A stretch of 64,000 nucleotides of DNA from Octopus sinensis (lineage: Eukaryota). Shown here in pieces: positions 3,068 to 61,503 of the stretch (position 1 is the stretch's first letter; the number at the start of each line of letters is the position of its first letter). Below the pieces are notes generated by a model. The model saw nothing but the letters and a program-made list of their open reading frames with translations, made no database searches and was not told the DNA's origin. Made by a program: the position numbers and the translations under genes. The stretch covers positions 27,652,001 through 27,716,000 of the forward strand of contig NC_043014.1 of assembly GCF_006345805.1 (NCBI RefSeq). Reading direction: 5' to 3'.

Positions 3068-3862
<795 letters not shown>

Positions 3863-3892
3863 CAGATAGATAGATAGATAGATATAGATATA

Positions 3893-4176
3893 GATATACA
3901 CACACACATACAAAGATAAATTGATAGATACAACTGAGTGGGTAAACAAAAATATGAGACACTGCCTAGTGCTTTTTTTATGTTGATAAGCCTGGTACTT
4001 ATTCTATTAGTTTATTCTTGTCAAACAAGTAAGTTATGTGGATGTAAGTAAATGAACAGCAGTTGTGAAGCAGTGATGAGGGAGAAACACAAAGACACAC
4101 ACATAGACTTACATATATACATACATATATATACGATTGATTTGTTTCAGTTCCTGTCTACGAAATCCATATATAT
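3893..4176 (-). repeat. SINE 3' portion; first unit of a local tandem duplication (second unit ~6926-7205)
   Basis: About 280 bp nearly identical to 6926-7205, including the non-SINE flank CATACAAAGATAAATT.ATAGATACAACTGAGTGGG. Confidence 0.75.
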
Positions 4177-6872
4177 TGTTGTTGGCATCCTTTTTATCTC
4201 AGAAAACAATGGAGTTGCGCATAAAATAGTCTAGTCTGGCTTTTACATTTCATGTCCTAATACATCTCCTGCTGTGGTTATGTAGTCCTATCCTGGACAA
4301 ACACTCCCTCTGGCAGGTGCCGCAAATGTAGCGAAGACTTTGCCTGGCTGGTTGTAATGTCATAGTTTTTTTTTGACGTCTTTTCTTGTCTTTCCTTTCT
4401 CCTCTCTCTCTCTGTCACTCCTTTCCTCTTTTACGGTATGTCGTCAATCTCCACGGTTGCTGGCAACTGCTTCCCAGTTGGTAATATTGATGTTGCAGGC
4501 ATTCATGTCCCTTTTGCAAACATCCTTGTATCGTAAGAACGGTCTTCCCACAGACCTAGTGCCCCTAGCAAGCTCTTCGTTGAGTATGTCCTTGGGGATT
4601 CTGCCATCTTCCATACAGCTAACATGTCCAAACTATCTCATACGTCTATGTGTGAGGAGTGCAAACATGCTTGGTATTCCTGCTTGCTTGAGGACATCTT
4701 TGTTGGGGACATGATTCTGCCATTTGATGCAAAGGATTTTCCGGAGGCAGCGCAGGTGAAAGATGTTTAGGCGATGCTCATGGTGTGTGTATGGCGTCCA
4801 AGTCTCACTTCCATACAGTTGAGTGCTAAGTACACATGCCTGGTAAATCTTCAATTTTGTGGTCTTGGTCAGCTTATTGTTGTCCCATGCTCATTTGGCG
4901 AGTTGGGCCATCACAGCAGCTGCCTTGCCAATGCGTATATTGAGCTCAGCAACAAGGGATAGGTTGTAGGTGACGGTAGAGCCGAGATAGGTAAACTTCT
5001 CCACCTCCTGTAGTCTGTGGTCTCCAATATGTATGTTTGGGATGTCTGATGTAGCCTGACCCATGATGTTGGTCTTCTTGAGGCTGATAACTAAGCCAAA
5101 GTTGCCACATGCTTGCTCAAACAGTTGATGAGCCTTTGTAGGGCTTCTTCTGTGTGTGATACCAGAGCGGCATAATCAGCAAATAGCATCTCCTTGATCA
5201 GGACGCTTCTGATTTTGGTCTTAGCACACAGACGTGAGAGATTGAACAGTTTCCTGTCACTTCTACTGTGCAGAAACACTCCATCATCTGATGTCTCAAA
5301 GGCATGTGACAGCAGCAGTGAGAAGAAGATGCCAAATAATGTAGGAGCAAAGACACAACCTTGCTTTACCCCATTTTTTATTTGGAAGGCGGCTGATATT
5401 GAACCATTGTGCTGTATGTTGCCTTGCATATCATCATGGAAAGATTTGATGATCCTCAGCAGCTTTGGTGGACATCCGATTTTTTGAAGCAGGATGAAGA
5501 GCCTTTTCTATTTACCAAGTCAAAGGCCTTTGTCAGATCAATGAAGGCCATATATAATGGTATTTTCTGCTCTCTGGACTTCTCCTGAAGTTGACGTATG
5601 GAGAATATCATCTCAATAATTGTTCTAAAGCCACACTGCGATTCTGGATAAATTCGAGAAGCAAACAGTTGCAGCCTGGACAGGATAATGCGAGCAAAGG
5701 CCTTTCCAACAGTGCTCAGAAGAGATATTCCATGGTAATTGTTACAATCACCATGGTCACCTTTGTTTTTGTAAAGCGTAATGATGTTAGCATCCTGCAT
5801 ATCCTGAGGGACTGTACCCTCTTCCCAGTGCTGACACAGAAGCTCATGAAGGTGTCGAAGCAGGATAGTGTTTTTGCCGGTTTTGATGATCTCTAAGGGG
5901 ATGCTGTCTTTTTCCGGAGCCTTGTTACTTGCTAGGGAGTCAATAGCCTTGGTGAGCTCTGTTATAGATGGCAGATTGTCAAGTTCACATATGACTGGCA
6001 AGATTTTGACACCCTCGATTGCAGCCTCAGTTACCATGGTCTCCCGTGAGTAGAGATCCTGGTAGTACTCCACCCATCTATCCATTTGCTTGCTTTGGTC
6101 CTTGATGAGATCTCCAGTAGTTGATTTCAGAGGGGCTGACTTGGTTGTGGATGGACCGAGGGCTTTCTTCAAACCGGCATACATCCCACGGGTGTCACCA
6201 CTGTCAGCAGCTGACTGGATACTCTGACAAATTTCCTGCCAATACCTATTTGCACAGCGTCTGGCAGTCAGTTGGGTTTTATTTCTTGCCTTTCTGAGTT
6301 CTTTGAGTGACTTTGTAGAAGAATCACTCTTGTATTGCATCAGAGCTGCACGCTTTGCTTCGATAACTGTTTCCAGCTCTGAGAGCCCAGCACTGAACCA
6401 ATCTGGGTTTTGCCTTTCTCTCATGCCAAAAGTATTTATTGATGTGTTATACAAAGCTTCCCTGATATAATTCCATCTACTTTCAGCAGAAGAGGTTGGG
6501 TAGCTACTGAGGGCAACCTTGATAGAAACAGCAAAACATTGTCGCAGTGTAGGGTCCGAGGTTCTGGCAGTGTTAATGCATGGTCAGCCCATTTAGGCAG
6601 AATCCTCACCCTGCTTCTTATTAGTGAATGATCTGTGTCACAATCCATGCTGTGGTAACTACGGGTCAGTTGAACAGAATTCAGAAAGGATCTTCATGTA
6701 ATGATGAGATCCAGCTGATGCCAGTGGTGAGATCTTGGATGTCTCCAAGATATTTTGTGGGATGTCTTGTTGGCAAAGAATGTGTTAGTGATGCACAGGT
6801 TATGGCATGTGCAAAATTCAAGTAGTCTCTGACCATTGTCATTCATGTTGCCAATATCAAAACACATACACT
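4177..6872 (-). mobile_element. 5'-truncated RTE (BovB-like) LINE with a 45-bp target-site duplication
   Basis: Endonuclease remnant (NDNGQRLLEFC...SWRHPRSHHWHQLDLIIT). 332-aa ORF 5456-6454 has RT motifs (YHGISLLSTVGK, PESQCGFR, FIDLTKAFDLVNR). ORF 5091-5429 has GVKQGCV and MLFADY; ORF 4633-4854 has LYGSETW. The 3' tail is GGATGCCAACAACA. Frameshifted. Confidence 0.92.
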
Positions 6873-42939: not shown

Positions 42940-45900
42940 GTTAAATATTTTAAACAATGTTGCTATATTGTATACAGTTAAAGTTTAGGGTTATTCAACG
43001 ATTTATCAAGAAGAATATTATAACAAAAGGATAGAAATTTATGAATACTTTTGAGTATATACCAAACTTTACCACAGTAGAGGGAGGAAAAGAAATTATC
43101 CAGAAATAGTTTAATATTTATACATATTGTACACTTAAATACTAACTCATCAGATGGTATCGGATTGATTAATTAAAGGAGTATTGAGGTAAAGGAACAT
43201 GCTAATTATATATTAATAAAATTATAATCTAAGCAGTGAATATACCAGTATAGTTTTATACACGCTAAGTATGAATTTATAGATACACAAATTAGATTAA
43301 TTTTATATATAAATATAGAGATAAAGGCTAATTATAAAATAATAAAGAAATAAAATAAAATAATCAAGTAGGGCAGAACACTATAGAAAAAGAAATAAAA
43401 TGGCTTAATTACTAATACTATGGTAAAGTATATGTAGCTTATTAACACCAATAGAGAAGATTTTTAGGAAAAGTATAATAATTCAAAATATATTAGACTA
43501 AAAATTATATATTTACTTATTTAGCTAATATCAATAAAAGACTGATGTCTGGTATAGGCTAAAGGAATATTTAAGTAATGGAACAATCATATTTTACACT
43601 AATCTTTTTTTAAAACTAGGGGTTATATTATAGGTTTAAGAAGTTATTATTATTACTCCCTACATAATATACTTTCTTAGTGGTACTCTTTTAGAAGGGT
43701 TATTTATATAAAGGCCCATATAAATACTAAGATCAGGAGGGTAGAGCCATTTAAGAAAGAGATAAATCAAGTAATTTCTAAAGATCATTTCAAACAATAT
43801 TGTCTTATTGTATAAAGTTAAAATTTAAGGTAATGAAGAAGATTATTAAGAATAAAATTTTATCAAAAGGATAAAACTTCTTTGAATATATTGAGTATAT
43901 ACCAAATTTTTACCACAATAAAGGGAGGAAAAGAAAATTGCAAAGAAATAGTTAAATATTTATTTACTTATTACTTATCTAAATATTAACTTACGAGGGG
44001 CGTTCAATAAGTAATGCCTCTGACCCACTTGCAGTTGTTTGATCTAGCTGAAATTTTGCATGTGCAATTACCTATATCTCTATAGATTAAGTGGCAAATT
44101 ACAGCTCTGAACTAATTGTGGTTTCTGATTTACAGGTGTTTGAACTGAGTCAAGTGTGAAACAGAGCCTGTTGAGTGTCGAGCAGTGATGCGGTTTTTGT
44201 ATTTGAAAGGATGCACACCACGGGAGACTTTTGATGAAATAAAAGTAACTTATGGTGATGATGCCCCATCATATGACTTTGTAAAACGCTGGCATCGTGA
44301 ATTCAAACATGGTCGGAACTTTGTGGAAACAGCTCCCAGATCTGGTCGCCCCCTTCTGCCATTGATGAGGCATCTGTCCGTCAAGTTGAGGCTGCCATTT
44401 TGGAAGATCGACGCATAACTATTCGCCAAATAGCCCATGAGGTCAAGATTAGTACCGGGTCTGTAGAAACTATCATTCATGACCATTTGCATATGCAAAA
44501 GGTGTCTGCCAGATGGATTCCCAGGCTGCTCACACCTTTCCAGAAGCAAGAACGTGTCAATAGCGCAAGGATGAATTTGAAGATTTGCCAAGAAGATGAG
44601 TCAAAATTTTTCAAAAGACTGATTACACAGGATGAAACCTGGGTCCATCACTATGATCCAGAGACCAAAGCCCAGTCAATGCAGTGGAAGTACCGTGACT
44701 CACCTCCTCCAAAGAAGGCAAGAGTGCAGCCCTCCGCTGGCAAGGTCATGCTCACAGTCTTCTGGGACCAGGACGGAGTAGTGATGACAGATTTCTTGGC
44801 AAAGGGTGCCACAATTACAGGAGTCTATTATGCTTCACTTTTGAGGAAATTAAGAGAAGCTATCAAAATCAAGAGGTGGGGCAAGATCAGCAAAGGCATC
44901 CTCCTCCTGCAGGACAACGCTCCGGTCCACAACTAGCGTGTCGCCAGATCAGAAGCACAGGCGTGCGGCTATGAACTCATCCCCCATCTCCTGACCTGCA
45001 CCCTCTGATTTTCACCTCTTCCCAGCTATGAAGTTGTTTTTGAAAGGAAAGCGTTTCCCAGATGATGCAGCCTTGATTTCTGAAGTCACGTCGTGGTTGG
45101 AGGACCAAGCTGGGGTCTTCTACAAAAACGGTCTTCAGAGCTGCATCAAACGATGGGAGAAATGCGTAACTCTGGGTGGTTCCTATGTAGAAAAAGTCTA
45201 ATAACTGTGCCAAGTTTCGTTGCTCTACTGCTATGGGAAGTGGGTCAGGGGCATTACTTATTGAACGCCCCTCGTATTATATGGTTTCTATGGAGATTGA
45301 TCAATTGGATTTAACTGGTATTTAATAAGCAACTGAGGTTAAAGAACATGTCAACTATATACTGATTTAATTAAATTGAAATATTTTAAGTTGTCAAGAT
45401 ACTGGTATTACCTTATATAAGCTGAGTACGAATTAATAGGGTTACAAGATTAAGATTTATTTAAGGCTACTATAAAATAATAACAATAACGATAATAAAA
45501 TGATTAGTTAGGGTAGAGCATCATAGAAAAGGAATAAAAACAGCCTAATCACTAAAAACTATAATAAAATATCTATACCTCATTAACTTCAATAGCAAGT
45601 ATTTATAGAAAATGTATAATAATTTAAGTATTATGAGCTAAAAATTGTTAATTAACTTATTTAGCTTATTATAATCAGGACTTAAACCCGGTATTGGTTA
45701 AAAGAATAATTGTTGTTAAAAGGACATACTAATTTTAAATTAAGAGGTTTTAATATAGATTTCAAAAGTTGTGTTAATCCATAAATGATATTACAGTTTC
45801 TTAGGGGTACTTAATTAGAAGGGTTGTTTAAAGCCAATATAAATACCAAAATTAAGAGGACAGAACACTTTAAGAAAGGGATAAAAAACTTAGTTACTAA

Positions 45901-46534: not shown

Positions 46535-49500
46535 CTAGATCATTCCTCAGCATGCCCCAAGACAGTTTCCACACGTTTTCCCCACTCATCTTGGTCTTCC
46601 ATAATGGTTCTCAGCTCCTGTATCCCTTCCATACCAGTATCCTCCAGCAAGCTGTCGATATAGGTTGTCTTCCTCTTTCCTCTCCTGGTTCTTCCTTCTG
46701 TTGGTTGCCAGAGTACTAGCTTGTTAGCAATTTAATCAGTTTATCTGACACAGTGCCCATGTAACCTCATCTTTCAATGCTATATCTTCAATGTTACTTT
46801 TGGTAGTCCCTGGTATAAGTCAGCATTTGTTATATGACTTTTCCAGGAGACATTAAGTGCCATTTTAAGCATCTTTTTTATAACAACTGTCCGACTGCTT
46901 CTTCAACGCCATAAACAACCTCACTTTCAATTTCCTTGCTAACTTCGAACCCCATACCTTTCTCAATTTATGGCAAGCACTCCAGGCAAGAGCTTTTCTT
47001 GCTATGATGTCTTTTCCAGTACTTTGTGTCCTTGCACCAAGGTATTTGAAATTTTCAAATACCTTGAGCAACTTACTGTCTCTCACTTTCACTGATGCAG
47101 GCGTTTCATGGTTGGATACTTGCAACTCTGTTTTCCTACCTTCCCTGATTCCTGCTATAATCCGCTCAGCACCTCTTGTGCCTGATCTGTCCTCTCTGTT
47201 AGTAATGCCAGGTCATCAGTGTAGTCCAGATCAGTTACTGCTACTGCTTGATGCCATCTACTTCTTTGCCTATGCAGTTTGAATCCCAGTTCTTCTTCTT
47301 TGCCCTCGTACATTCAACACATTACATAGTCCAGAATGATGGCAAAGAGATAAGGTGCTAGCATGTTGTCTTGTAATACTCCAGCTTTGACTTCAAAGTA
47401 TTCCGTCTCTCTATCAGGAGTGATCACCTTCGCTATGGTGTTCTCATATAGCTTACTTATTGCTCTCAGAATTCTTGGTGAAATATATGCTTTAAGTATC
47501 TTCATTATCATCATTCCTCTACATTCCTCTCATTAAAGTCTACATAGATAATGACAGCCTTTCTATTACGGCTCTTTACTCCTCATATCAGTCTTCTAAG
47601 TGCGACAGTGTAAGATGTTGTTGACCGTCCTGATCTGAATCCATTTTGATTTGGTTGCAATTGTTTGTCTATCTTAGGTCATACTTGGTTAAGTATCATC
47701 TTGTTGACCATTTTTGCAACAATGGATGACAGACTTATCCCTCTGTAATTCTCAGTATCACTTAGGTCTCCAGTTTTGGGCAGCAGTAGCAAGGCTGTCT
47801 CAGACCATTGTTCTGGCTTCACATTGTCATTCAGTAGTTTGTTTGTAAATTCAAGGATGATGTCATCTAAATCACATCTTTTTAGTACTTCTGGCAGGAT
47901 GTTGTCAGAAACCAGTTTGTTTTCCCTCTTTCAGGTTACTTGTAGCTCTTTCTATTTCCTGTTTTGCTTTGTGAAGTCTCCATCCTCGATTTGCAAACCG
48001 TTGAGTATCTTTGCTAATTCTTCATTTTCTGTTTCACTGTCAACTTCTGGATCCTTCCCAAGTGAGTTGTAGAAATGGGTGTACCACTTCTTGATTCTCT
48101 CATCCTTTGATTTCCCTTTGATGATTTCATGTTTTGCAGCTTTGCAACCAGTGATGGAGTTAATCAGCATCCAGCTTTCTCCGTGCTTACTCTTTGCATC
48201 TGCATTTTCGACCTGGGAGATCATTTCATCCAGTTCCTCTTCTTGAATCTCTTGGTACACCTGTTTTAGACCCTCTTTCGTTCTTTGTAAAGTTTGTTTA
48301 GTATTGTTGTTGGCAGCGTTTTGGTAGTTGCTGAATGCCTTTTGTACTTCACTGCATGCTTTCTCTACCCTAGGATCATCAGCTAACTTTCTCCATTTCA
48401 TCCTCTCCTTTATTGGTATCAGTTTTGCTGCCACTTCTTCATTTGATTGCACAAACTTGCCATATTGCTCTGTAACAGTATCCCTGTTGTTGGATACTTC
48501 AGCAAATCTGTTGTATTTCGCGATGTAGACTAATCGTAGCATTTTTTTCTTGCAGGAGTTTTGCTTGTATTTAGACTAAGACGTAGTCTAGATGTCACTA
48601 AGCGATGGTCACTCCCTAAACTGCTAAAGTTGTTATATGCTTCTACATTGTGTATTGAATTCTTCCATTTCTTATTAATCAGTATGTAGTCAATTTGGGA
48701 CTTGCTACCATTCATGTCGGAGATAAATGTCCATTGTTTACCTTTCTTTTTCTTGAATAGAGTGTTAGTGATGTGAAGATGACATTCTGCCTCATGATCC
48801 AGGAGAAGCTGGCCATTCTTGTTGGTCTCCTTATGGAATGTGTAGTGGACTGCATCCTCATCCAAATGAGCATTAAAATCACCGCATTCTGTGGTAATAT
48901 AATGTTTTGGTATTTCATTGATGACACTTGTCAGTGTTTTGTAGTGCTCCTCTGCATCCTTGCTTCCTACAGTGGTTAATAACTACTGTGATGGGATGGG
49001 TTTCCATTGAACGTGGCTGTGACTATTCTGTCATTTACTGGTATTACTTAGGCCAATGCTTTCTCTGCCAAACCATTCATTACTAATCCTTCCCCTTCTG
49101 CTGCAGCACCATTAGTACTTCTCCATCCACTTGTTATTAGTGTACAGCCTTCAAGTTGTTCAATGAGAGTAGGGTCTTCTTCATGCACTATCTTGTGTTC
49201 ACCTACTCCAAGGATGTTTAGTTTCCATTTGTTAAAGTTGTGAGCCATCTCCAGATGTTTCTCTTTTTCCCTAAGTGTTCTTACATTGAGTGTTCCAATT
49301 TGCTGGTACTTTTTACTAATCATAAGTTCAATTCTTCTGTTCTTGCCATCAGCTACTTCTCTTCCAGTTGGATTTAAAGAAGTATCTTCATCTGTCATTA
49401 TGCAACTTGCTTGAACATCCAGAATGTCTGCGTCAAGGGCTCTAGCCCTGGTGCCATTAACATGTAGATTCATAGGGGTTTCGGTTGCACATAAAATAGG

Positions 49501-57168: not shown

Positions 57169-57792
57169 ATGTGAGCTATTACCGTGTTCTATCAACTGTT
57201 CACCCTGGACCAATGTTCAGTTGACTGTGATAGAAGAGGGTCAAAAAGATACAATGACTTCCCTGACTCAGTCAAGACACAATCTGCCGATGATGGTATT
57301 GCATAATGTGTAGTTGTTGCATGCAAGTGCAACAGAATTGAAGATATTTGTTGCCAGAGAAGCTGTGCAAATGAATGTCAACAAATATCTTAGTAATACA
57401 TTGGTCTTTGTTGAAATGGAATTTGAGAGTGACTTAACTGACAACCATACAAAATGAGTAATGAGCTACAATCCAAGAGAATGACCCAACTCGGACCATG
57501 TTGCTAAGAAACATAGGTTTGTGTTGACACTTCACAAATATAACAATTAACAAATGTAATCAACAGAACCACAGCAAAAAACAATAATAAGTGTTAATAA
57601 TTATGGTAATGATTGCCTCCATAAAATCAATATTCATTTATTACATATAAGTAATAAAAAATTTATCCTTTTTGAAACACTAAATTGACCAATAGATAGC
57701 TAGAATCTGCTAATTTAGTGTTTGGAACTGAAAAATTATTGCTTATTAAAACTTTATAAAATAAAACAAAACAAAACAAAAATTGTCAAAAA

Positions 57793-60700
57793 ATGGGTGC
57801 AACTCATATTGAAGATGCTAGTGCTCAACCAGGAAAACTTTATACATGTGAGCACTGTCAAATGACATTTTCTCGTCCTGTACACCTGGAGAGGCATATG
57901 AGAAATGTTCATTCTCAAGAGAGAGAGTCAGAATGTAATATTTGTCATAAATTGTTTCAAAACAAACACTATTTATCCGTCCACATGCTGACTCACAATG
58001 TCAACAAAGAGCTGCAGTGTCCACTTTGCAAGATGACATTTAATAACTTGGCTACTTTAAACAAACACAAAGATGCTCACTTAGGTATTGGTGTGACACA
58101 GGCACAGAAAGACAATCTTAGTAATTTCCGGCAACCACGAACTATTGCCAATCTGTTGGCCAGCAACCAGTCCAGTCGAGGTAACTCATCGAATGTGCCC
58201 TTAATTAGTGTGGCTCCTGGCATTAACAATGCAAACACTTTGAACTGTGATTTACGTTCTACAGATTTGAGGTCAATGAACAAAAACAAGAGGAATTTGT
58301 TGCCTAATCAAATTTCTCTCCAAAATGCGATGAGACTTGCATCAAATGACACAACTGTTAACTGTGATCTAACATCCAGAGACATCAACTCCCTGAACAC
58401 AAACCAAACTGTGAGATTGGCTCAAAAACGCCCCAGTAACAGTGATAATGATGTCATAGTCACTGGGGTCAGTTCACTGAAGCGACCGTTTCGATTTCAA
58501 AACTTATCTAATTCCACAACACCTCAGAATCGACAGCCCAGTGCAAATCAACTATCAAAAGCAGCTGCTATTTCTCTTTTGTCTCAACAGTTGGCATCTC
58601 AGAAGAACTCCCAGAATTCCCTGTTACAAAATCAAATTCAGGTTCAAAGTTCATCTACACGCCAGAACTCTACACACAATCCCTCCGGTAGAAATATTAC
58701 TGATCGAATCTATTTGATGCCTGAAAATGGCAACAGCAGAAACGTAGTAAGAATGCAACAGCCATCAAATTTTAGGTACAGTCAAAGAAAGCAGTTAGCA
58801 CAACAGCCAATTCCAAATCAGCGCTATTCCACTAACAGTCTTTATTCCAATCCTTTAAATCAACAGAGTCAAAGAAATGTTGTTAATTGCGATTTAACTC
58901 GTTCTGATCTTGCTACAATCAGTCAGCGATCAGGGGCTGCTGCATCAAATGTGACATCACAGTTCTCCAATGGTAGCAAATCAAACAGTACAGTGAATTG
59001 TGACCTGACAATTTCTAATATCAGTTCATTGAACCGTAACTACAGACCTAGCAACAACTTGCTTGCATCAAGATCAAGAAACTCTGTTTCTCAAAATAAT
59101 CTCCCTTCAAACCGAGTGAGAAGTGCCGTGAATTTTGATCTCACTACAGCAGACATAAATTTCCTCAGAAGAAACCGGCGTATACGTCAAGTAGAAAGAT
59201 TAACTGATGTTGGTGCACCAACAGTGGGTCAAACATCAAATACTTTGAACTGTGATCTGTCTGTTGTTAATTTGGGTGCCATGGAACGAAACAAAATGCC
59301 ACCAAGCAATAATAGTCGAATTAATCGGATAAATTTAAATCAGATCCCAAAACAGGTGCAGAATACACTCAACTCTGGTCTTAGAGCAAATAATTTGAAT
59401 GACTGGAACAAACGCAACACAATAGTATACCAGCAAAAGAACAACCAAGTCTTACAAAGCCCTACTAGTCACCCAGTGAATACCCTTAATTGTGATCTTA
59501 CCAGTGTCAATCTTGGCACTTTGAACCAGCAGCAAGCTGCCAACAATAGTAATATTGTTAACCAAGAGGTTCGTCCAGTTCAGATTTATGCAAACAGCAA
59601 TGTCCCTCTTAGTTCACTGGTTCGTAAAGACATAAGTCCAAGAGAAAATAGTATGACTGGTACTCCAACTAGCAGCAATAGTTACCCTGTACAGATTGTA
59701 AGAAACCGAAGTCATCAGAAACGTGCTGTAAACGTCAACCCAGGAGTATCTACTTTAAACAGTCCAAATGCCATGCTAATCTCACGACTGAATCGCCAAA
59801 GGAAGATGCTAGCTACTCCTAACAACATCCCTGTTATAGATCTTGTGGCTGAGGAAGAGAAAACTTCGAATGTGCCTTCAGGATCAACTGATGTTGTTCA
59901 GTTTGATTTGACCAATCCTGACATCAACATTATTAGTTACGAGAATGGTACCAGCTTGTCTAGTAGTAAGTCGACTTCCAAAAATGTTGTTGATATTGTA
60001 GACTTGGAATCACATGACAGCTCTGGAAGACCTCCAGTGTTGAATAATCAGGCATCTGTTGTAGAATTTGATCTTTCCAACAATAACATCAGAGCATTTA
60101 ATACAAATCAGAATCGTATTCCAAACACAAGTACAATCAATTTGAACAGCAATCTCTGGGCGTCATCTAACTCCACTAGAAACAACAGCCTAAATGTTCA
60201 GTCTGCTACTGTAGCCAATGAAAGTAGCTCGTCATTGTCAGACATTACTCTCGTTGACATCAGATCTTTAAAGCCATCGGAGGAAGTAACTGAAACTGTA
60301 AGCAGACATGTTGATGAAGTCGGTGACAAATCTTCTGTCTCTGGCATTACTCTTGTAGATATCCGTTCACTGAGTAGTGCTGAGATTGAAGCCAACTTCC
60401 AAACATCCAACAAAGAACCCTTAACAGTAACAAATTCTGAAACATCCCAGATGTCACATTCTTCTACAAGAACTGGGAATGTTTCTGACAATTATCAAGT
60501 TGGAGACAGCTCTCTTACAGCTTCTAAAGTTCCGACATTAAATCCATTAATTCGACCACCATCTACAAAAGCGATAATTACTGTTGATCTTAGTTCCATT
60601 GATTTTGAAGACATTGATGAGGCTAAACGTACAACACCACAGGCAAGTAAATCAATTTCTGAACAATACGAAGATGAGAACTTTACTTGCAAATATTGTT

Positions 60701-61503
60701 CAGTGAAAGTCCGTTATCTTTATAACTATATATTTCACCTTAAATCTCATTTGGAAATAGGGTTTTGCATCTGCTATTATTGCAGTTCTGTGTTTGAAGA
60801 CTTCCGCAAACTTGTGGTGCATTTGGTATCACATGTAAGCAACCTAAAGAACCAGTGTGTGTTTTGCCGCAATATCTTAGTATCTACCACAAATCCCATC
60901 CAACACATGACAGAGTGTGGTGAATTGCAGTGTGTAATGTTTGAAGCTGGATCTTGTGTCAAAACAGAAAAATCCGAGGAAAAAAATAACAGCAAGGTGA
61001 AGACAAAGACAGAGAGTGCAGCAGAAAAGTCTGAGAAAGAAGTGGGTAATTTGGAAGAAAGACTTTTGGAGGAAGTGGAAAAACAAGCACTTGTAATACT
61101 AGAAAAGGAAGATGATGAGAATGTAAGGGAAGCAAAGGATGAAAAAAATACAAAAGGGGAAAGAGAAGAAACATGTATTGACTCAGAATCAAACAAATTG
61201 AACAAAGGGAATGCAAATAAGGAGGTGGAAATGAAAGTTGATAGGGTCAGTGCTGGTTCAAATAAAGATAATGGCCAAAAAGAAAAAAGTAGATTAATAG
61301 AAGAGGAGAAAGAAAAAACAATGATGAAAGAGGTAAAGGCAGAAGTAGAGAAACAGGGAACAGGAGCTGAAGAGCAAGAAGAGGAGAGTAAGGAAAATGT
61401 AAAAGAAGAAAAGCTAGATGAAGATAGTATTGAATGGAAGGTGAAAGAGGATTTTAACAGAACTGACCAATTGATTTCAGAACTTAATCAAGATACACTA
61501 TAG
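57793..61503 (+). CDS. C2H2 zinc-finger protein, 1236 aa, uninterrupted ORF
   Basis: Three canonical fingers at aa 17-96 (CEHC..HMRNVH, CNIC..HMLTH, CPLC..HKDAH). Three more at aa 964-1042 (CKYC..HLKSH, CYYC..HLVSH, CVFC..HMTEC). Between them lies a ~870-aa N/S/Q-rich region, and after them an E/K-rich tail. Start context AAAATGG; AATAAA at 61635. An unseen upstream coding exon cannot be excluded. Confidence 0.95.
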   Translation: MGATHIEDASAQPGKLYTCEHCQMTFSRPVHLERHMRNVHSQERESECNICHKLFQNKHYLSVHMLTHNVNKELQCPLCKMTFNNLATLNKHKDAHLGIGVTQAQKDNLSNFRQPRTIANLLASNQSSRGNSSNVPLISVAPGINNANTLNCDLRSTDLRSMNKNKRNLLPNQISLQNAMRLASNDTTVNCDLTSRDINSLNTNQTVRLAQKRPSNSDNDVIVTGVSSLKRPFRFQNLSNSTTPQNRQPSANQLSKAAAISLLSQQLASQKNSQNSLLQNQIQVQSSSTRQNSTHNPSGRNITDRIYLMPENGNSRNVVRMQQPSNFRYSQRKQLAQQPIPNQRYSTNSLYSNPLNQQSQRNVVNCDLTRSDLATISQRSGAAASNVTSQFSNGSKSNSTVNCDLTISNISSLNRNYRPSNNLLASRSRNSVSQNNLPSNRVRSAVNFDLTTADINFLRRNRRIRQVERLTDVGAPTVGQTSNTLNCDLSVVNLGAMERNKMPPSNNSRINRINLNQIPKQVQNTLNSGLRANNLNDWNKRNTIVYQQKNNQVLQSPTSHPVNTLNCDLTSVNLGTLNQQQAANNSNIVNQEVRPVQIYANSNVPLSSLVRKDISPRENSMTGTPTSSNSYPVQIVRNRSHQKRAVNVNPGVSTLNSPNAMLISRLNRQRKMLATPNNIPVIDLVAEEEKTSNVPSGSTDVVQFDLTNPDINIISYENGTSLSSSKSTSKNVVDIVDLESHDSSGRPPVLNNQASVVEFDLSNNNIRAFNTNQNRIPNTSTINLNSNLWASSNSTRNNSLNVQSATVANESSSSLSDITLVDIRSLKPSEEVTETVSRHVDEVGDKSSVSGITLVDIRSLSSAEIEANFQTSNKEPLTVTNSETSQMSHSSTRTGNVSDNYQVGDSSLTASKVPTLNPLIRPPSTKAIITVDLSSIDFEDIDEAKRTTPQASKSISEQYEDENFTCKYCSVKVRYLYNYIFHLKSHLEIGFCICYYCSSVFEDFRKLVVHLVSHVSNLKNQCVFCRNILVSTTNPIQHMTECGELQCVMFEAGSCVKTEKSEEKNNSKVKTKTESAAEKSEKEVGNLEERLLEEVEKQALVILEKEDDENVREAKDEKNTKGEREETCIDSESNKLNKGNANKEVEMKVDRVSAGSNKDNGQKEKSRLIEEEKEKTMMKEVKAEVEKQGTGAEEQEEESKENVKEEKLDEDSIEWKVKEDFNRTDQLISELNQDTL

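What the first reader, a model, noticed from the sequence alone, without database searches (positions are those of the whole stretch)
58234..60618. About ten copies of an unrecognised 16-aa motif, roughly every 40 aa, inside the zinc-finger protein
The disordered linker repeats a motif close to x-[TV]-[VL]-N-[CF]-D-L-[TS]-x-x-[DN]-[IL]-x-x-[LMI]-N. Copies: aa148 NTLNCDLRSTDLRSMN, 187 TTVNCDLTSRDINSLN, 362 NVVNCDLTRSDLATIS, 399 STVNCDLTISNISSLN, 444 SAVNFDLTTADINFLR, 483 NTLNCDLSVVNLGAME, 524 NTLNSGLRANNLNDWN (degenerate), 563 NTLNCDLTSVNLGTLN, 700 DVVQFDLTNPDINIIS, 755 SVVEFDLSNNNIRAFN, and weakly 928 IITVDLSSIDFEDID. Six spacings are 37-45 aa. The spacers have diverged while the motif has not, which suggests selection on a multivalent docking array. 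I recognise no family with this motif. Its core partly resembles the [VI][VI]DLT SUMO-interacting motif and the CtBP-binding PxDLS. The architecture (fingers plus a long SLiM array) parallels ASCIZ/ATMIN, whose repeats bind LC8. The partner is unknown.
Basis: partly seen in the sequence, partly recalled or inferred. Interest (0 to 1): 0.8.

Follow-up and report, generated by a model that had tools for sequence, protein, structure and literature searches.

The report
Conserved ten-copy peptide motif array
An uncharacterised octopus zinc-finger protein carries ten copies of a 16-18-residue peptide motif in its disordered middle; the motif has been kept intact while the sequence between copies drifted, so it is most likely a multi-site docking platform, but its binding partner is still unproven.

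Summary
The single ORF 57793-61503 (+) encodes a 1236-aa protein: three N-terminal C2H2 fingers, a disordered middle of about 860 aa, three C-terminal fingers and an acidic tail. The strict core occurs 9 times, against 0.0006 expected by shuffling. There is no DNA-level tandem repeat. In Argonauta and in a more distant cephalopod contig, every copy sits at the orthologous position. Motif identity is 0.90 and 0.73, against 0.65 and 0.375 for the spacers. Motif dN/dS is about 0.04, as low as in the fingers, against about 0.22 for the spacers. The motifs contain no indels.

Pfam, PDB and full-text searches find nothing like it. A motif HMM run against 1.84 billion proteins finds only this orthogroup.

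The unit reads as a short strand (V-N-C-D-L) followed by a capped helical turn. Its [CF]-D-L-[TS] core matches the RNF4-type psi-D-L-T SUMO-interacting motif, and canonical SIM-like sites lie just downstream. However, most copies fail the strict SIM definition, and none meets the CtBP (no Pro) or LC8 (no TQT) definition.

Best reading: a multivalent docking array, with SUMO the leading candidate partner (about 0.4). A new motif class with its own partner remains plausible (about 0.3).

The parts
57793..61503 (+). Uninterrupted ORF of 1236 aa plus stop; an uncharacterised C2H2 zinc-finger protein of Octopus
   Evidence: ORF list. The exact sequence is in NCBI/UniRef and clusters with O. bimaculoides XP_014784504.1 and O. 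vulgaris CAI9737619.1. dN/dS is far below 1.
57841..58080 (+). Three classical C2H2 zinc fingers (aa 17-96)
   Evidence: Pfam zf-C2H2 E=1.5e-10, 3 stretches. Nearly invariant in all orthologues. dN/dS 0.02.
58234..58281 (+). Motif copy 1, NTLNCDLRSTDLRSMN (aa 148-163)
   Evidence: (37 bits)
58351..58398 (+). Motif copy 2, TTVNCDLTSRDINSLN (aa 187-202)
58423..58497 (+). Most conserved non-motif island, QKRPSNSDNDVIVTGVSSLKRPFRF (aa 211-235). Its KRP...KRP layout looks like a bipartite nuclear localisation signal (inference).
   Evidence: Conserved-island scan; alignment
58876..58923 (+). Motif copy 3, NVVNCDLTRSDLATIS (aa 362-377)
58987..59034 (+). Motif copy 4, STVNCDLTISNISSLN (aa 399-414); identical in all three lineages
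59122..59169 (+). Motif copy 5, SAVNFDLTTADINFLR (aa 444-459); Phe variant, Phe kept in all lineages
59239..59286 (+). Motif copy 6, NTLNCDLSVVNLGAME (aa 483-498)
59362..59409 (+). Motif copy 7, NTLNSGLRANNLNDWN (aa 524-539). Its core is degenerate in octopods, but the orthologous copy in the distant contig is canonical (NTVNCDLT).
59479..59526 (+). Motif copy 8, NTLNCDLTSVNLGTLN (aa 563-578); canonical here, degenerate in the distant contig
59827..59859 (+). Canonical SIM-like site IPVIDLVAEEE (aa 679-689): hydrophobic core followed by an acidic run
   Evidence: VIL-only SIM core hits IPVI/VIDL/IDLV. IPVIDL is invariant in three lineages.
59890..59937 (+). Motif copy 9, DVVQFDLTNPDINIIS (aa 700-715); meets psi-psi-x-psi followed by D if Phe is counted as hydrophobic
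59986..60024 (+). Canonical SIM-like site VVDIVDLESHDSS (aa 732-744)
   Evidence: Matches the ELM-style parallel SIM pattern. Conserved in the orthologue alignment.
60055..60102 (+). Motif copy 10, SVVEFDLSNNNIRAFN (aa 755-770)
60241..60270 (+). DITLVDIRSL (aa 817-826), first of two copies of a second conserved peptide
60343..60402 (+). GITLVDIRSLSSAEIEANFQ (aa 851-870), second copy; invariant in three lineages
60574..60621 (+). Weak 11th copy / canonical SIM-like site IITVDLSSIDFEDIDE (aa 928-943). It is in register with the whole motif pattern but carries an acidic tail.
   Evidence: ELM-style SIM match. Net charge -6. No motif-HMM score.
60682..60918 (+). Three C-terminal fingers (two C2H2, one C2HC; aa 964-1042)
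   Evidence: Profile against PDB sequences hits ZNF568, CTCF and PRDM9 finger arrays, E down to 1e-11. Conserved in Argonauta and in the L001 contig.
60973..61500 (+). Acidic/lysine-rich tail (aa 1061-1236, net charge -19) ending in the conserved FNRTDQLISELNQDTL

Best explanation
The ten units form a multivalent docking array in the disordered middle of a DNA-binding (six-finger) nuclear protein. The protein is found only in cephalopods in the libraries searched.

Each unit, [TV]-[VL]-N-[CF]-D-L-[TS]-x-x-[DN]-[IL]-x-x-[LMI]-N-[KR]-N, reads in two parts. The first is a short extended strand with one hydrophobic face (V3, C/F5, L7). The second is a helix N-cap: L7 as N', T/S8 as N-cap, D/N11 as N3 and I/L12 as N4, i.e. 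a capping box with a hydrophobic staple. One or two helical turns follow, presenting I/L12 and L/M15.

The copies arose by old duplication of a unit of about 40 aa. Since then they have been held by purifying selection as strong as that on the zinc fingers, while the spacers drift and change length.

The partner I commit to as most likely is SUMO. In the register N4-[CF]5-D6-L7, the invariant Leu would fill the HS1 pocket and C/F would fill HS3. This is the same psi-D-L-T core as RNF4 SIM2/SIM3. T/S8 and D11 would supply the phosphorylatable/acidic side. Each site would be weak, and ten of them plus the four or five canonical SIM-like sites downstream would give avidity for poly- or multi-SUMOylated chromatin proteins at the loci bound by the fingers.

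Shown: the array, its conservation, its disorder and its uniqueness. Inferred: docking and the strand-cap-helix shape. Speculative: SUMO as the ligand.

Confidence that it is a selected multivalent docking array is about 0.8. Confidence that SUMO is the ligand is about 0.4, and that is the figure given for this explanation.
For: Array and selection:
- 9 strict cores against 0.0006 expected.
- Every copy lies at the orthologous position in Argonauta and in contig L001.
- Motif versus spacer identity is 0.90 vs 0.65 (p=2e-11) and 0.73 vs 0.375 (p=5e-16).
- dN is 0.056 for motifs, 0.227 for spacers and 0.038 for fingers, with dS above 1 everywhere, so the constraint is on the protein and not on the RNA.
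- 0 of 160 motif columns carry a gap, against 114 of 684 spacer columns. Each lineage keeps 9 strict cores.

Disorder and local shape:
- AF2 on aa 136-600 gives mean pLDDT 31.5. The only secondary structure is short helices that fall on motif positions 9-20 in 6 of 8 copies.
- The single-unit model from 30 instances has pLDDT 66, with a helix at motif positions 12-15.

SUMO:
- The core [CF]-D-L-[TS] occurs in 8 of the ten array copies; the ninth psi-D-L-[ST] hit is VDLS in the 11th copy. It equals the psi-D-L-T of RNF4 SIM2 (TVGDEIVDLTCES) and SIM3 (SLEPVVVDLTHND) (PMC4083429).
- Conserved canonical SIM-like sites sit in the same disordered region (IPVIDLVAEEE, VVDIVDLESHDSS, IITVDLSSIDFEDIDE). 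The last is in register with the full 16-aa pattern, which links the two kinds of site.
Against: - Seven of ten copies have only two hydrophobic residues in any four-residue window, whereas the SIM definition asks for at least three (PMC12751080). None of the ten is hit at the motif core by an ELM-style SIM pattern with a V/I/L-only core; the one overlapping hit (DLSVVN in copy 6) starts at D6, in a different register.
- Copies 1-8 lie in a strongly basic segment (aa 100-600, net +33), with +2 to +4 charge in the ten residues after most copies. Parallel SIMs are normally followed by acidic residues.
- N4 (8 of 10 copies; identical across the three lineages in 9 of 10 orthologous sets) and the downstream half (D/N11, I/L12, L/M15, N16) have no role in a minimal SIM.
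- C/F at position 5 was never replaced by V/I/L in three lineages.
- Generic SIM patterns are not enriched in this region over shuffles (7 vs 5.2), so those hits are weak evidence on their own.
Confidence: 0.4

Rival explanations
1. A new class of short linear motif with its own partner. The 16-18-residue strand-cap-helix unit would be read as a whole by a folded domain that is not SUMO, CtBP or LC8. That domain could be lineage-specific, or a conserved hub whose motif has not been described. The array would load many copies of it onto a DNA-bound protein.
For: Conservation covers about 12 informative positions, including polar ones (N4, D6, T8, D/N11, N16) and a C/F-specific pocket position. 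No known motif definition is met. There is no hit in Pfam, in PDB sequences or in 1.84 billion proteins outside the orthogroup, and the core strings appear in no paper as a motif. The basic flanks suggest a partner with an acidic surface.
Against: No candidate partner can be named. The psi-D-L-T core and the neighbouring canonical SIM-like sites are then coincidence. A single-copy use of the motif in other proteins, expected for a hub-binding motif, could not be searched for.
Confidence: 0.3
2. CtBP-recruiting array. The units would be degenerate PxDLS motifs that recruit the CtBP co-repressor, as in ZEB, Kruppel, Knirps and HIC1.
For: D-L-[ST] is present in 8 of the ten array copies. The protein is a C2H2 finger protein, like many CtBP clients. 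One Pro-less variant, GLDLSKK of HIC1, is reported (Deltour 2002, as cited in PMC3671672).
Against: No copy in any of the three lineages has Pro at position 1, and the ELM-style pattern gives 0 hits. The position before [CF] is a conserved Asn. The conserved downstream half is unexplained. Ten copies would be unprecedented for a CtBP client (own knowledge).
Confidence: 0.08
3. ASCIZ-like LC8 ladder. The units would be non-canonical LC8 (DYNLL) sites anchored on V-N-C, so that LC8 dimers zip two chains together.
For: The architecture is the same: N-terminal fingers followed by a long disordered region with about ten evenly spaced sites, compared with 11 sites in human ASCIZ and 7 in fly (PMC5963919). 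[VL]-N-C-D resembles gephyrin's validated G-V-Q-C-E, and Asn anchors have been seen (PMC12057147). Copy 9 has Q at the anchor position (VVQFD).
Against: The protein has no TQT, and only one loose [TVI]Q[TVC] match, which lies outside the motifs. LC8 motifs extend 5-7 residues N-terminal of the anchor and only 2 residues C-terminal (dASCIZ peptides). Here positions -3 to 0 are poorly conserved, and conservation runs 12 residues C-terminal. Phe at +1 is unprecedented (own knowledge).
Confidence: 0.04
4. Homotypic 'stickers'. The hydrophobic islands in an Asn/Gln/Ser-rich, prion-like spacer would associate with each other and drive condensation of the protein on chromatin, with no external partner.
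For: The middle region is 40-46% N+Q+S+T, with regularly spaced hydrophobic units. This is a stickers-and-spacers layout.
Against: Self-association rarely demands position-specific conservation of polar residues, or C/F identity per copy, over this depth of divergence. AF2 shows no inter-unit packing.
Confidence: 0.08
5. No present function. The repeat would be the neutral remnant of a tandem duplication, or decayed zinc fingers, or an RNA-level constraint.
For: The spacing of about 40 aa points to an origin by tandem duplication. The pattern psi-x-C-x-x-[TS]-x-x-x-psi superficially recalls the first half of a C2H2 finger.
Against: Motif dN/dS is about 0.04 with saturated dS, so the constraint is on the protein. 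There is no DNA repeat. hhalign of the motif profile against the protein's own six fingers gives probability 0.06%. The motifs carry no indels although the spacers carry many.
Confidence: 0.03

Closest known systems
psi-psi-D-L-T SUMO-interacting motifs and poly-SIM proteins (RNF4 SIM2/3 IVDLT and VVDLT; PIAS-type VIDLT; repeated SIMs of SLX4 and ZNF451)
   Same: The core is psi-D-L-[TS], with an invariant Leu and a tolerated Cys. The motif lies in a disordered region and occurs in multiple copies in one chain. Canonical SIM-like sites with acidic tails sit in the same protein (PMC12751080).
   Different: Position 4 is a conserved Asn where SIMs have a hydrophobic residue. Most copies have only two hydrophobic core residues. 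The flanks are basic, not acidic. A conserved 8-10-residue downstream extension (cap plus helical turn) is present. C/F is preferred over V/I/L. SUMO binding is untested.
ASCIZ/ATMIN (ZNF822) with its LC8-binding TQT array
   Same: N-terminal C2H2 fingers are followed by a long disordered region with about ten regularly spaced copies of one beta-strand-type motif. The spacers diverge and the motif count is conserved (PMC5963919).
   Different: There is no TQT. The conserved residues lie on the opposite (C-terminal) side of the putative anchor. Three extra C-terminal fingers are present. Orthology with ASCIZ was not tested, and nothing in the searches suggests it.
CtBP-binding PxDLS motifs of zinc-finger repressors (ZEB1/2, Kruppel, Knirps, HIC1)
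   Same: A D-L-[ST] core in a zinc-finger transcription-factor-like protein, with several copies per protein in some clients.
   Different: Pro at position 1 is absent from all copies and lineages. The unit is much longer and there are many more copies.
CHAMP1/ZNF828 (recalled from my own knowledge, not tested)
   Same: Fingers at both ends, with a long disordered middle carrying families of repeated short motifs.
   Different: The motifs are different (SPE, WK, FPE). No sequence relationship was looked for or found.

Membership tests
SUMO-interacting motif (SIM) | Four-residue core with at least three hydrophobic residues (V/I/L; Cys accepted), in the form psi-psi-x-psi or psi-x-psi-psi (PMC12751080) | tested here: not met
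   With V/I/L only, none of the ten copies is hit at the motif core; LSVV/VVNL in copy 6 lie downstream of the core. With C/F counted, only copies 3, 9 and 10 (VVNC, VVQF, VVEF) qualify at the core, so the other seven have two hydrophobic residues.
SUMO-interacting motif (SIM) | An invariably hydrophobic residue (L/I/V) for the HS1 pocket | tested here: met
   L7 is present in 10 of 10 window copies and is identical across three lineages in 9 of 10 orthologous sets.
SUMO-interacting motif (SIM) | Acidic and/or phosphorylatable residues flanking the core | tested here: inconclusive
   D6 is present in 9 of 10 copies, T/S8 in 8 of 10 and D11 in 5 of 10. However, the ten residues after the motif are net basic (+2 to +4) in copies 1-7. 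Only copy 9 and the 11th copy are acidic overall.
SUMO-interacting motif (SIM) | Lies in an intrinsically disordered region | tested here: met
   AF2 on aa 136-600: all residues have pLDDT below 50 and pTM is 0.14. Spacers vary in length between species.
SUMO-interacting motif (SIM) | Binds the beta2/alpha1 groove of SUMO | not testable with these tools
CtBP-binding PxDLS motif | Pro at position 1 of P-x-D-L-S | tested here: not met
   0 hits of P[LVIPME][DENS][LM][VASTRG] in any of the three lineages. The position is Asn, Gln or Glu. The pattern was recalled from memory of ELM.
CtBP-binding PxDLS motif | D-L-[ST] core | tested here: met
   8 of the ten array copies, plus VDLS in the 11th copy.
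LC8 (DYNLL) recognition motif / ASCIZ | TQT anchor or a close variant | tested here: not met
   The protein has 0 TQT. One IQV lies outside the motifs. The putative anchor triad would be [VL]-N-[CF].
LC8 (DYNLL) recognition motif / ASCIZ | Motif extends 5-7 residues N-terminal and only 2 residues C-terminal of the anchor (PMC12057147) | tested here: not met
   Positions -3 to 0 are identical across lineages in only 0-5 of 10 copies. Conservation runs from +1 to +12 after the putative anchor.
LC8 (DYNLL) recognition motif / ASCIZ | Orthology of the finger domain with ASCIZ | not tested
   No ASCIZ sequence was compared. The searches returned no ASCIZ-named protein.
C2H2 zinc-finger protein | C-x2-C-x12-H-x3-5-H fingers recognised by the family profile | tested here: met
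   Pfam zf-C2H2 scores 41.4 bits against a cut-off of 25.2 for the three N-terminal fingers. The C-terminal three fingers match PDB finger arrays at E=1e-11.
Any described protein repeat or domain (Pfam-A, PDB) | A significant profile match over aa 100-960 | tested here: not met
   No Pfam family below E=0.1 in that region. The motif profile against PDB sequences gives 0 hits at E<=10.

The most novel reading that the evidence does not exclude
The unit is a previously undescribed class of linear motif: a strand plus a capped helical turn, with a C/F-specific pocket residue and a conserved Asn. It would be read by a partner other than SUMO, CtBP or LC8. This cephalopod-restricted zinc-finger protein would use ten copies of it to build a large, DNA-tethered multivalent assembly. 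In other words, it would be an independent, ASCIZ-like invention of a 'finger domain plus motif ladder' regulator with a new hub.
Probability: 0.3. Interest if true: 0.65.

Novelty: new variant of a known kind. Interest (0 to 1): 0.45.

Why it matters
Multivalent motif arrays in disordered regions are a recognised way to sense the concentration of a hub protein or to build assemblies by avidity. ASCIZ-LC8, RNF4-polySUMO and Nup159-LC8 are examples. Few such arrays are known, and almost none outside model organisms.

Here the array is clean. It has ten units, is as constrained as the zinc fingers, and sits in a gene found only in cephalopods in the libraries searched. Its motif fits no catalogued class. 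The partner can be identified with simple experiments such as peptide pull-down, NMR or ITC.

If the partner is SUMO, the array extends the accepted sequence space of SIMs: an Asn at HS4, C/F at HS3 and a helical extension. If it is not, the array defines a new motif-hub pair. Either way, it gives a functional handle on an otherwise anonymous lineage-specific regulator.

Tried and rejected
- DNA tandem repeat or recent duplication: TRF finds nothing, third codon positions have diverged, and every copy is orthologously placed.
- RNA-level constraint, such as editing-site structure: dS in the motifs is at least as high as in the spacers and is saturated.
- Decayed zinc fingers: hhalign of the motif profile against the protein's own fingers gives probability 0.06%.
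- Folded repeat domain: AF2 gives pLDDT 31.5 and no packing. Fold search was therefore not run, because matches to such a model would be meaningless.
- Neuropeptide-precursor-like processing (conserved peptides with basic flanks): rejected by reading the sequence. The N-terminus runs straight into zinc fingers without a hydrophobic signal segment, dibasic sites do not flank both sides, and there is no amidation Gly. This was not formally tested.
- Other strand-type motif classes were considered by eye (calcineurin PxIxIT, HP1 PxVxL, clathrin box, Rb LxCxE, PP1 RVxF, FHA pTxxD, LIR, NES). Each lacks its key residue in most copies (Pro, central Val, first Leu, Glu, Phe/Trp, invariant Thr, aromatic, spacing).
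- More distant homologues: full-length search, profile of the middle plus C-terminal region and profile of the C-terminal fingers all returned only the same three clusters or nothing. One search failed to return even the proteins that contain the query, so it is uninformative.
- Literature: no paper contains the core strings as a motif. Nothing was found under the NCBI product name or under the SRA run of the distant contig. The cephalopod C2H2 paper does not mention SUMO, disorder or linear motifs.
- The taxon of the distant contig (SRR27666071) could not be established.
Full report
**What is there**

The finding lies inside one uninterrupted ORF, window 57793-61503 (+), 1236 aa. Pfam recognises three classical C2H2 fingers at aa 17-96 and nothing else above noise. 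A profile of the Cys/His cluster at aa 964-1042 matches tandem finger arrays in the PDB (ZNF568, CTCF, PRDM9; E down to 1e-11). The protein therefore has three more fingers at the C-terminal end. Between the two finger sets lie about 860 residues rich in Ser, Asn, Gln and Thr. After the second set comes an acidic/lysine-rich tail.

The exact protein is already in NCBI/UniRef. It clusters with Octopus bimaculoides XP_014784504.1 ('putative uncharacterized protein DDB_G0282133', 97% identical) and with O. vulgaris CAI9737619.1. The window is therefore Octopus, and the gene is annotated but uncharacterised.

**Check of the observation**

All ten copies read exactly as listed, and the coordinates are exact (aa 148 = nt 58234; aa 942 = nt 60618). 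The spacings are 39, 175, 37, 45, 39, 41, 39, 137 and 55 aa, so six lie within 37-45 aa.

The strict core [VL][NQE][CF]DL[TSR] occurs 9 times in aa 100-960. In 20,000 shuffles the mean was 0.00055 and the maximum 1. Tandem Repeats Finder sees no DNA repeat in the ORF. Among the copies, codon positions 1, 2 and 3 are 52%, 65% and 40% identical, so the similarity is held at the protein level.

Relative-entropy profiling against the composition of the region puts the informative positions at 2-8, 11-12 and 15-18. The unit is [TV]-[VL]-N-[CF]-D-L-[TS]-x-x-[DN]-[IL]-x-x-[LMI]-N-[KR]-N. A six-frame scan of the whole window with a motif HMM finds the motif nowhere else.

**Conservation between species**

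The protein searches returned only three relatives:
- O. bimaculoides, 97% identical.
- Argonauta hians, 68% identical.
- An 880-aa product of a 4.1-kb Logan contig from run SRR27666071, 47% identical, taxon unknown.

All ten copies are present at orthologous positions in all three.

| Measure | Motif | Spacer | Fingers | Call |
|---|---|---|---|---|
| Identity to window, Argonauta | 0.90 | 0.65 | – | 19 (Fisher p=2e-11) |
| Identity to window, distant contig | 0.73 | 0.375 | – | 19 (p=5e-16) |
| dN, window vs Argonauta (Nei-Gojobori) | 0.056 | 0.227 | 0.038 | 20 |
| dN/dS (approximate) | 0.04 | 0.22 | 0.02 | 20 |
| Alignment columns with a gap | 0 of 160 | 114 of 684 | – | 60 |

dS is 1.0-1.7 in all three classes, so it is saturated and the dN/dS ratios are approximate. 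The high dS in the motifs rules out an RNA-level constraint.

Each lineage keeps nine strict cores, but the decayed copy differs. It is copy 7 in the octopods and copy 8 in the distant contig. Both were therefore canonical in the common ancestor. Copy-specific residues are kept too: the three Phe copies are Phe in all lineages, and five of the six window Cys copies are Cys in all three. The exception is copy 8, where the distant contig has Ser.

**Is it an already described repeat?**

No.
- Pfam has nothing in aa 100-960.
- A profile of 30 motif instances (alignment A3) finds nothing in PDB sequences even at E<=10.
- The same profile, run exhaustively with HMMER against 1.84 billion representative proteins, finds only the two clusters of this orthogroup, with ten stretches each. 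No other protein reaches E<=0.001.
- The core strings occur in no paper of the full-text library as a motif.

One caveat applies. A protein with a single copy would not reach significance in the HMM search, and cephalopod coverage of the library is thin.

**Anatomy and likely mode of action**

AF2 on aa 136-600 with the orthologue alignment gives mean pLDDT 31.5, with no residue above 50. The region is disordered and the units do not pack into a repeat fold. The only secondary structure in that model is short helices, and in six of eight copies they fall on motif positions 9-20. A single-unit model built from the 30 instances reaches pLDDT 66 (75 over the core), with a helical turn at motif positions 12-15.

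This agrees with what the sequence shows. Hydrophobic residues alternate at positions 3, 5 and 7, giving a strand with one apolar face. Then comes L7-[TS]8-x-x-[DN]11-[IL]12. From established knowledge of helix capping, this is a capping box (N-cap Ser/Thr, N3 Asp/Glu) with a hydrophobic staple (N' and N4). A further apolar residue follows at position 15.

The units therefore look like peptide ligands that add a strand to a partner and then lay one or two helical turns on it. That they dock something is inferred from the pattern of selection, not shown.

The region is also charge-segregated. aa 100-600 (copies 1-8) is net +33, with basic residues immediately after most units. aa 676-960 (copies 9-11) is net -18.

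**Which partner? SUMO**

The [CF]-D-L-[TS] core equals the psi-D-L-T of RNF4 SIM2 and SIM3 (TVGDEIVDLTCES, SLEPVVVDLTHND; PMC4083429).

A recent review gives the relevant rules (PMC12751080):
- The residue in the HS1 pocket is invariably hydrophobic (Leu/Ile/Val, once Cys).
- HS3 is the next most selective pocket.
- HS2 tolerates polar residues.
- The strand can extend without a consensus.
- Ser/Thr/acidic residues follow a parallel core.
- SIMs are often repeated and sometimes 'extended'.

In the register N4-[CF]5-D6-L7, the two most selective pockets receive the two most conserved apolar residues.

The same disordered region contains conserved sites that are textbook SIM-like: IPVIDLVAEEE, VVDIVDLESHDSS and IITVDLSSIDFEDIDE. 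The last is in register with the entire 16-aa pattern, which suggests the two kinds of site are variants of one ancestral unit.

The evidence against SUMO is substantial:
- Seven of ten units have only two hydrophobic residues in any four-residue window, and none matches a V/I/L-only SIM pattern at the motif core.
- The flanks of copies 1-8 are basic.
- The conserved Asn at position 4, the C/F preference and the whole downstream half are unexplained.
- Generic SIM patterns are not enriched in the region over shuffles.

**Which partner? CtBP and LC8**

CtBP: D-L-[ST] is present, but no copy in any lineage has the proline, and the pattern gives zero hits. The only Pro-less precedent I could document is HIC1's GLDLSKK, cited in PMC3671672.

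LC8: the ASCIZ-like architecture is striking, and [VL]-N-C-D recalls gephyrin's G-V-Q-C-E. Asn anchors are on record (PMC12057147). But the protein has no TQT. LC8 motifs are specified on the N-terminal side of the anchor and end two residues after it. Here conservation starts two residues before the putative anchor and runs twelve residues after it.

**Verdict on mechanism**

I commit to a multivalent docking array, tethered to DNA by the fingers, that works by avidity (about 0.8). SUMO is the single most likely ligand (about 0.4).

| Alternative | Probability |
|---|---|
| A new motif class with its own partner | about 0.3 |
| Homotypic stickers | 0.08 |
| CtBP | 0.08 |
| LC8 | 0.04 |
| No function | 0.03 |

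**Novelty and interest**

The kind of thing is known: a motif ladder in the disordered region of a finger protein. This particular motif is uncatalogued, and in the libraries searched it is confined to one cephalopod orthogroup. I rate it a new variant of a known kind.

The finding is solid and cheaply testable. It neither overturns expectations nor opens a long-standing question, so the interest score is 0.45.

**Limits**

- Only three independent lineages were available.
- dS is saturated.
- The ELM-style patterns were written from memory.
- No complex prediction or binding assay could be run.
- The taxon of the most distant orthologue is unknown.

Noticed in passing
L001 nt 2778-2780 (Logan contig from SRR27666071; orthologue P0003): An in-frame TAG ends the called 880-aa product. 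The same frame then continues for more than 450 codons and encodes the conserved three C-terminal fingers. This could be read-through, A-to-I recoding (TAG to TGG), a polymorphism or an assembly error.
   Followed up: partly
window 59362-59409 and 59479-59526 (copies 7 and 8): Reciprocal decay. Copy 7 is degenerate in Octopus and Argonauta but canonical in the distant contig, and copy 8 is the reverse. Each lineage ends up with nine strict cores, which hints at selection on copy number.
   Followed up: yes
window 58423-58497 (aa 211-235): QKRPSNSDNDVIVTGVSSLKRPFRF is the most conserved stretch of the disordered region and is not a motif copy. The two KRP triplets 17 residues apart look like a bipartite nuclear localisation signal, with a V-I-V hydrophobic patch between them.
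   Followed up: no
window 60241-60270 and 60343-60402 (aa 817-826, 851-870): A second repeated peptide, [DG]ITLVDIRSL, occurs twice. The second copy extends to SSAEIEANFQ and is invariant in three lineages. The motif HMM does not detect it.
   Followed up: partly
window 58090-60672 (aa 100-960): The disordered region is charge-segregated. aa 100-600 is net +33 and carries copies 1-8. aa 676-960 is net -18 and carries copies 9-11 and the canonical SIM-like sites.
   Followed up: partly
window 61453-61500 (aa 1221-1236): The extreme C-terminus, FNRTDQLISELNQD[TS]L, is conserved between Octopus and Argonauta, although the tail before it is highly divergent.
   Followed up: no
window 44301-44933 (+), 5459-6583 (-), 48533-48982 (-): Transposable-element debris elsewhere in the window: a mariner-type transposase fragment (Pfam Transposase_1, E=3e-24), a reverse-transcriptase fragment (RVT_1, E=3e-10) and an endonuclease-RT fragment below the Pfam cut-off. 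The window also has many microsatellite-derived pseudo-ORFs.
   Followed up: partly
window 57758-57781: An (AAAAC)n microsatellite of 4.8 copies ends 12 bases upstream of the start codon.
   Followed up: no
window 60777-61205 (-): A 142-aa antisense ORF lies opposite the acidic/lysine-rich tail. It is serine/phenylalanine-rich and is most likely a compositional artefact of the GA-rich coding strand.
   Followed up: no
L001 nt ~3700-4136: In the distant orthologue, the acidic tail contains its own short tandem peptide repeat (…DSETMEAHLEDSEMMEAHLE…), which is absent from Octopus.
   Followed up: no
tool behaviour: The word-indexed protein search with the C-terminal finger alignment returned no hit at all, not even the proteins from which the alignment was made. 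That negative result says nothing about distribution.
   Followed up: no
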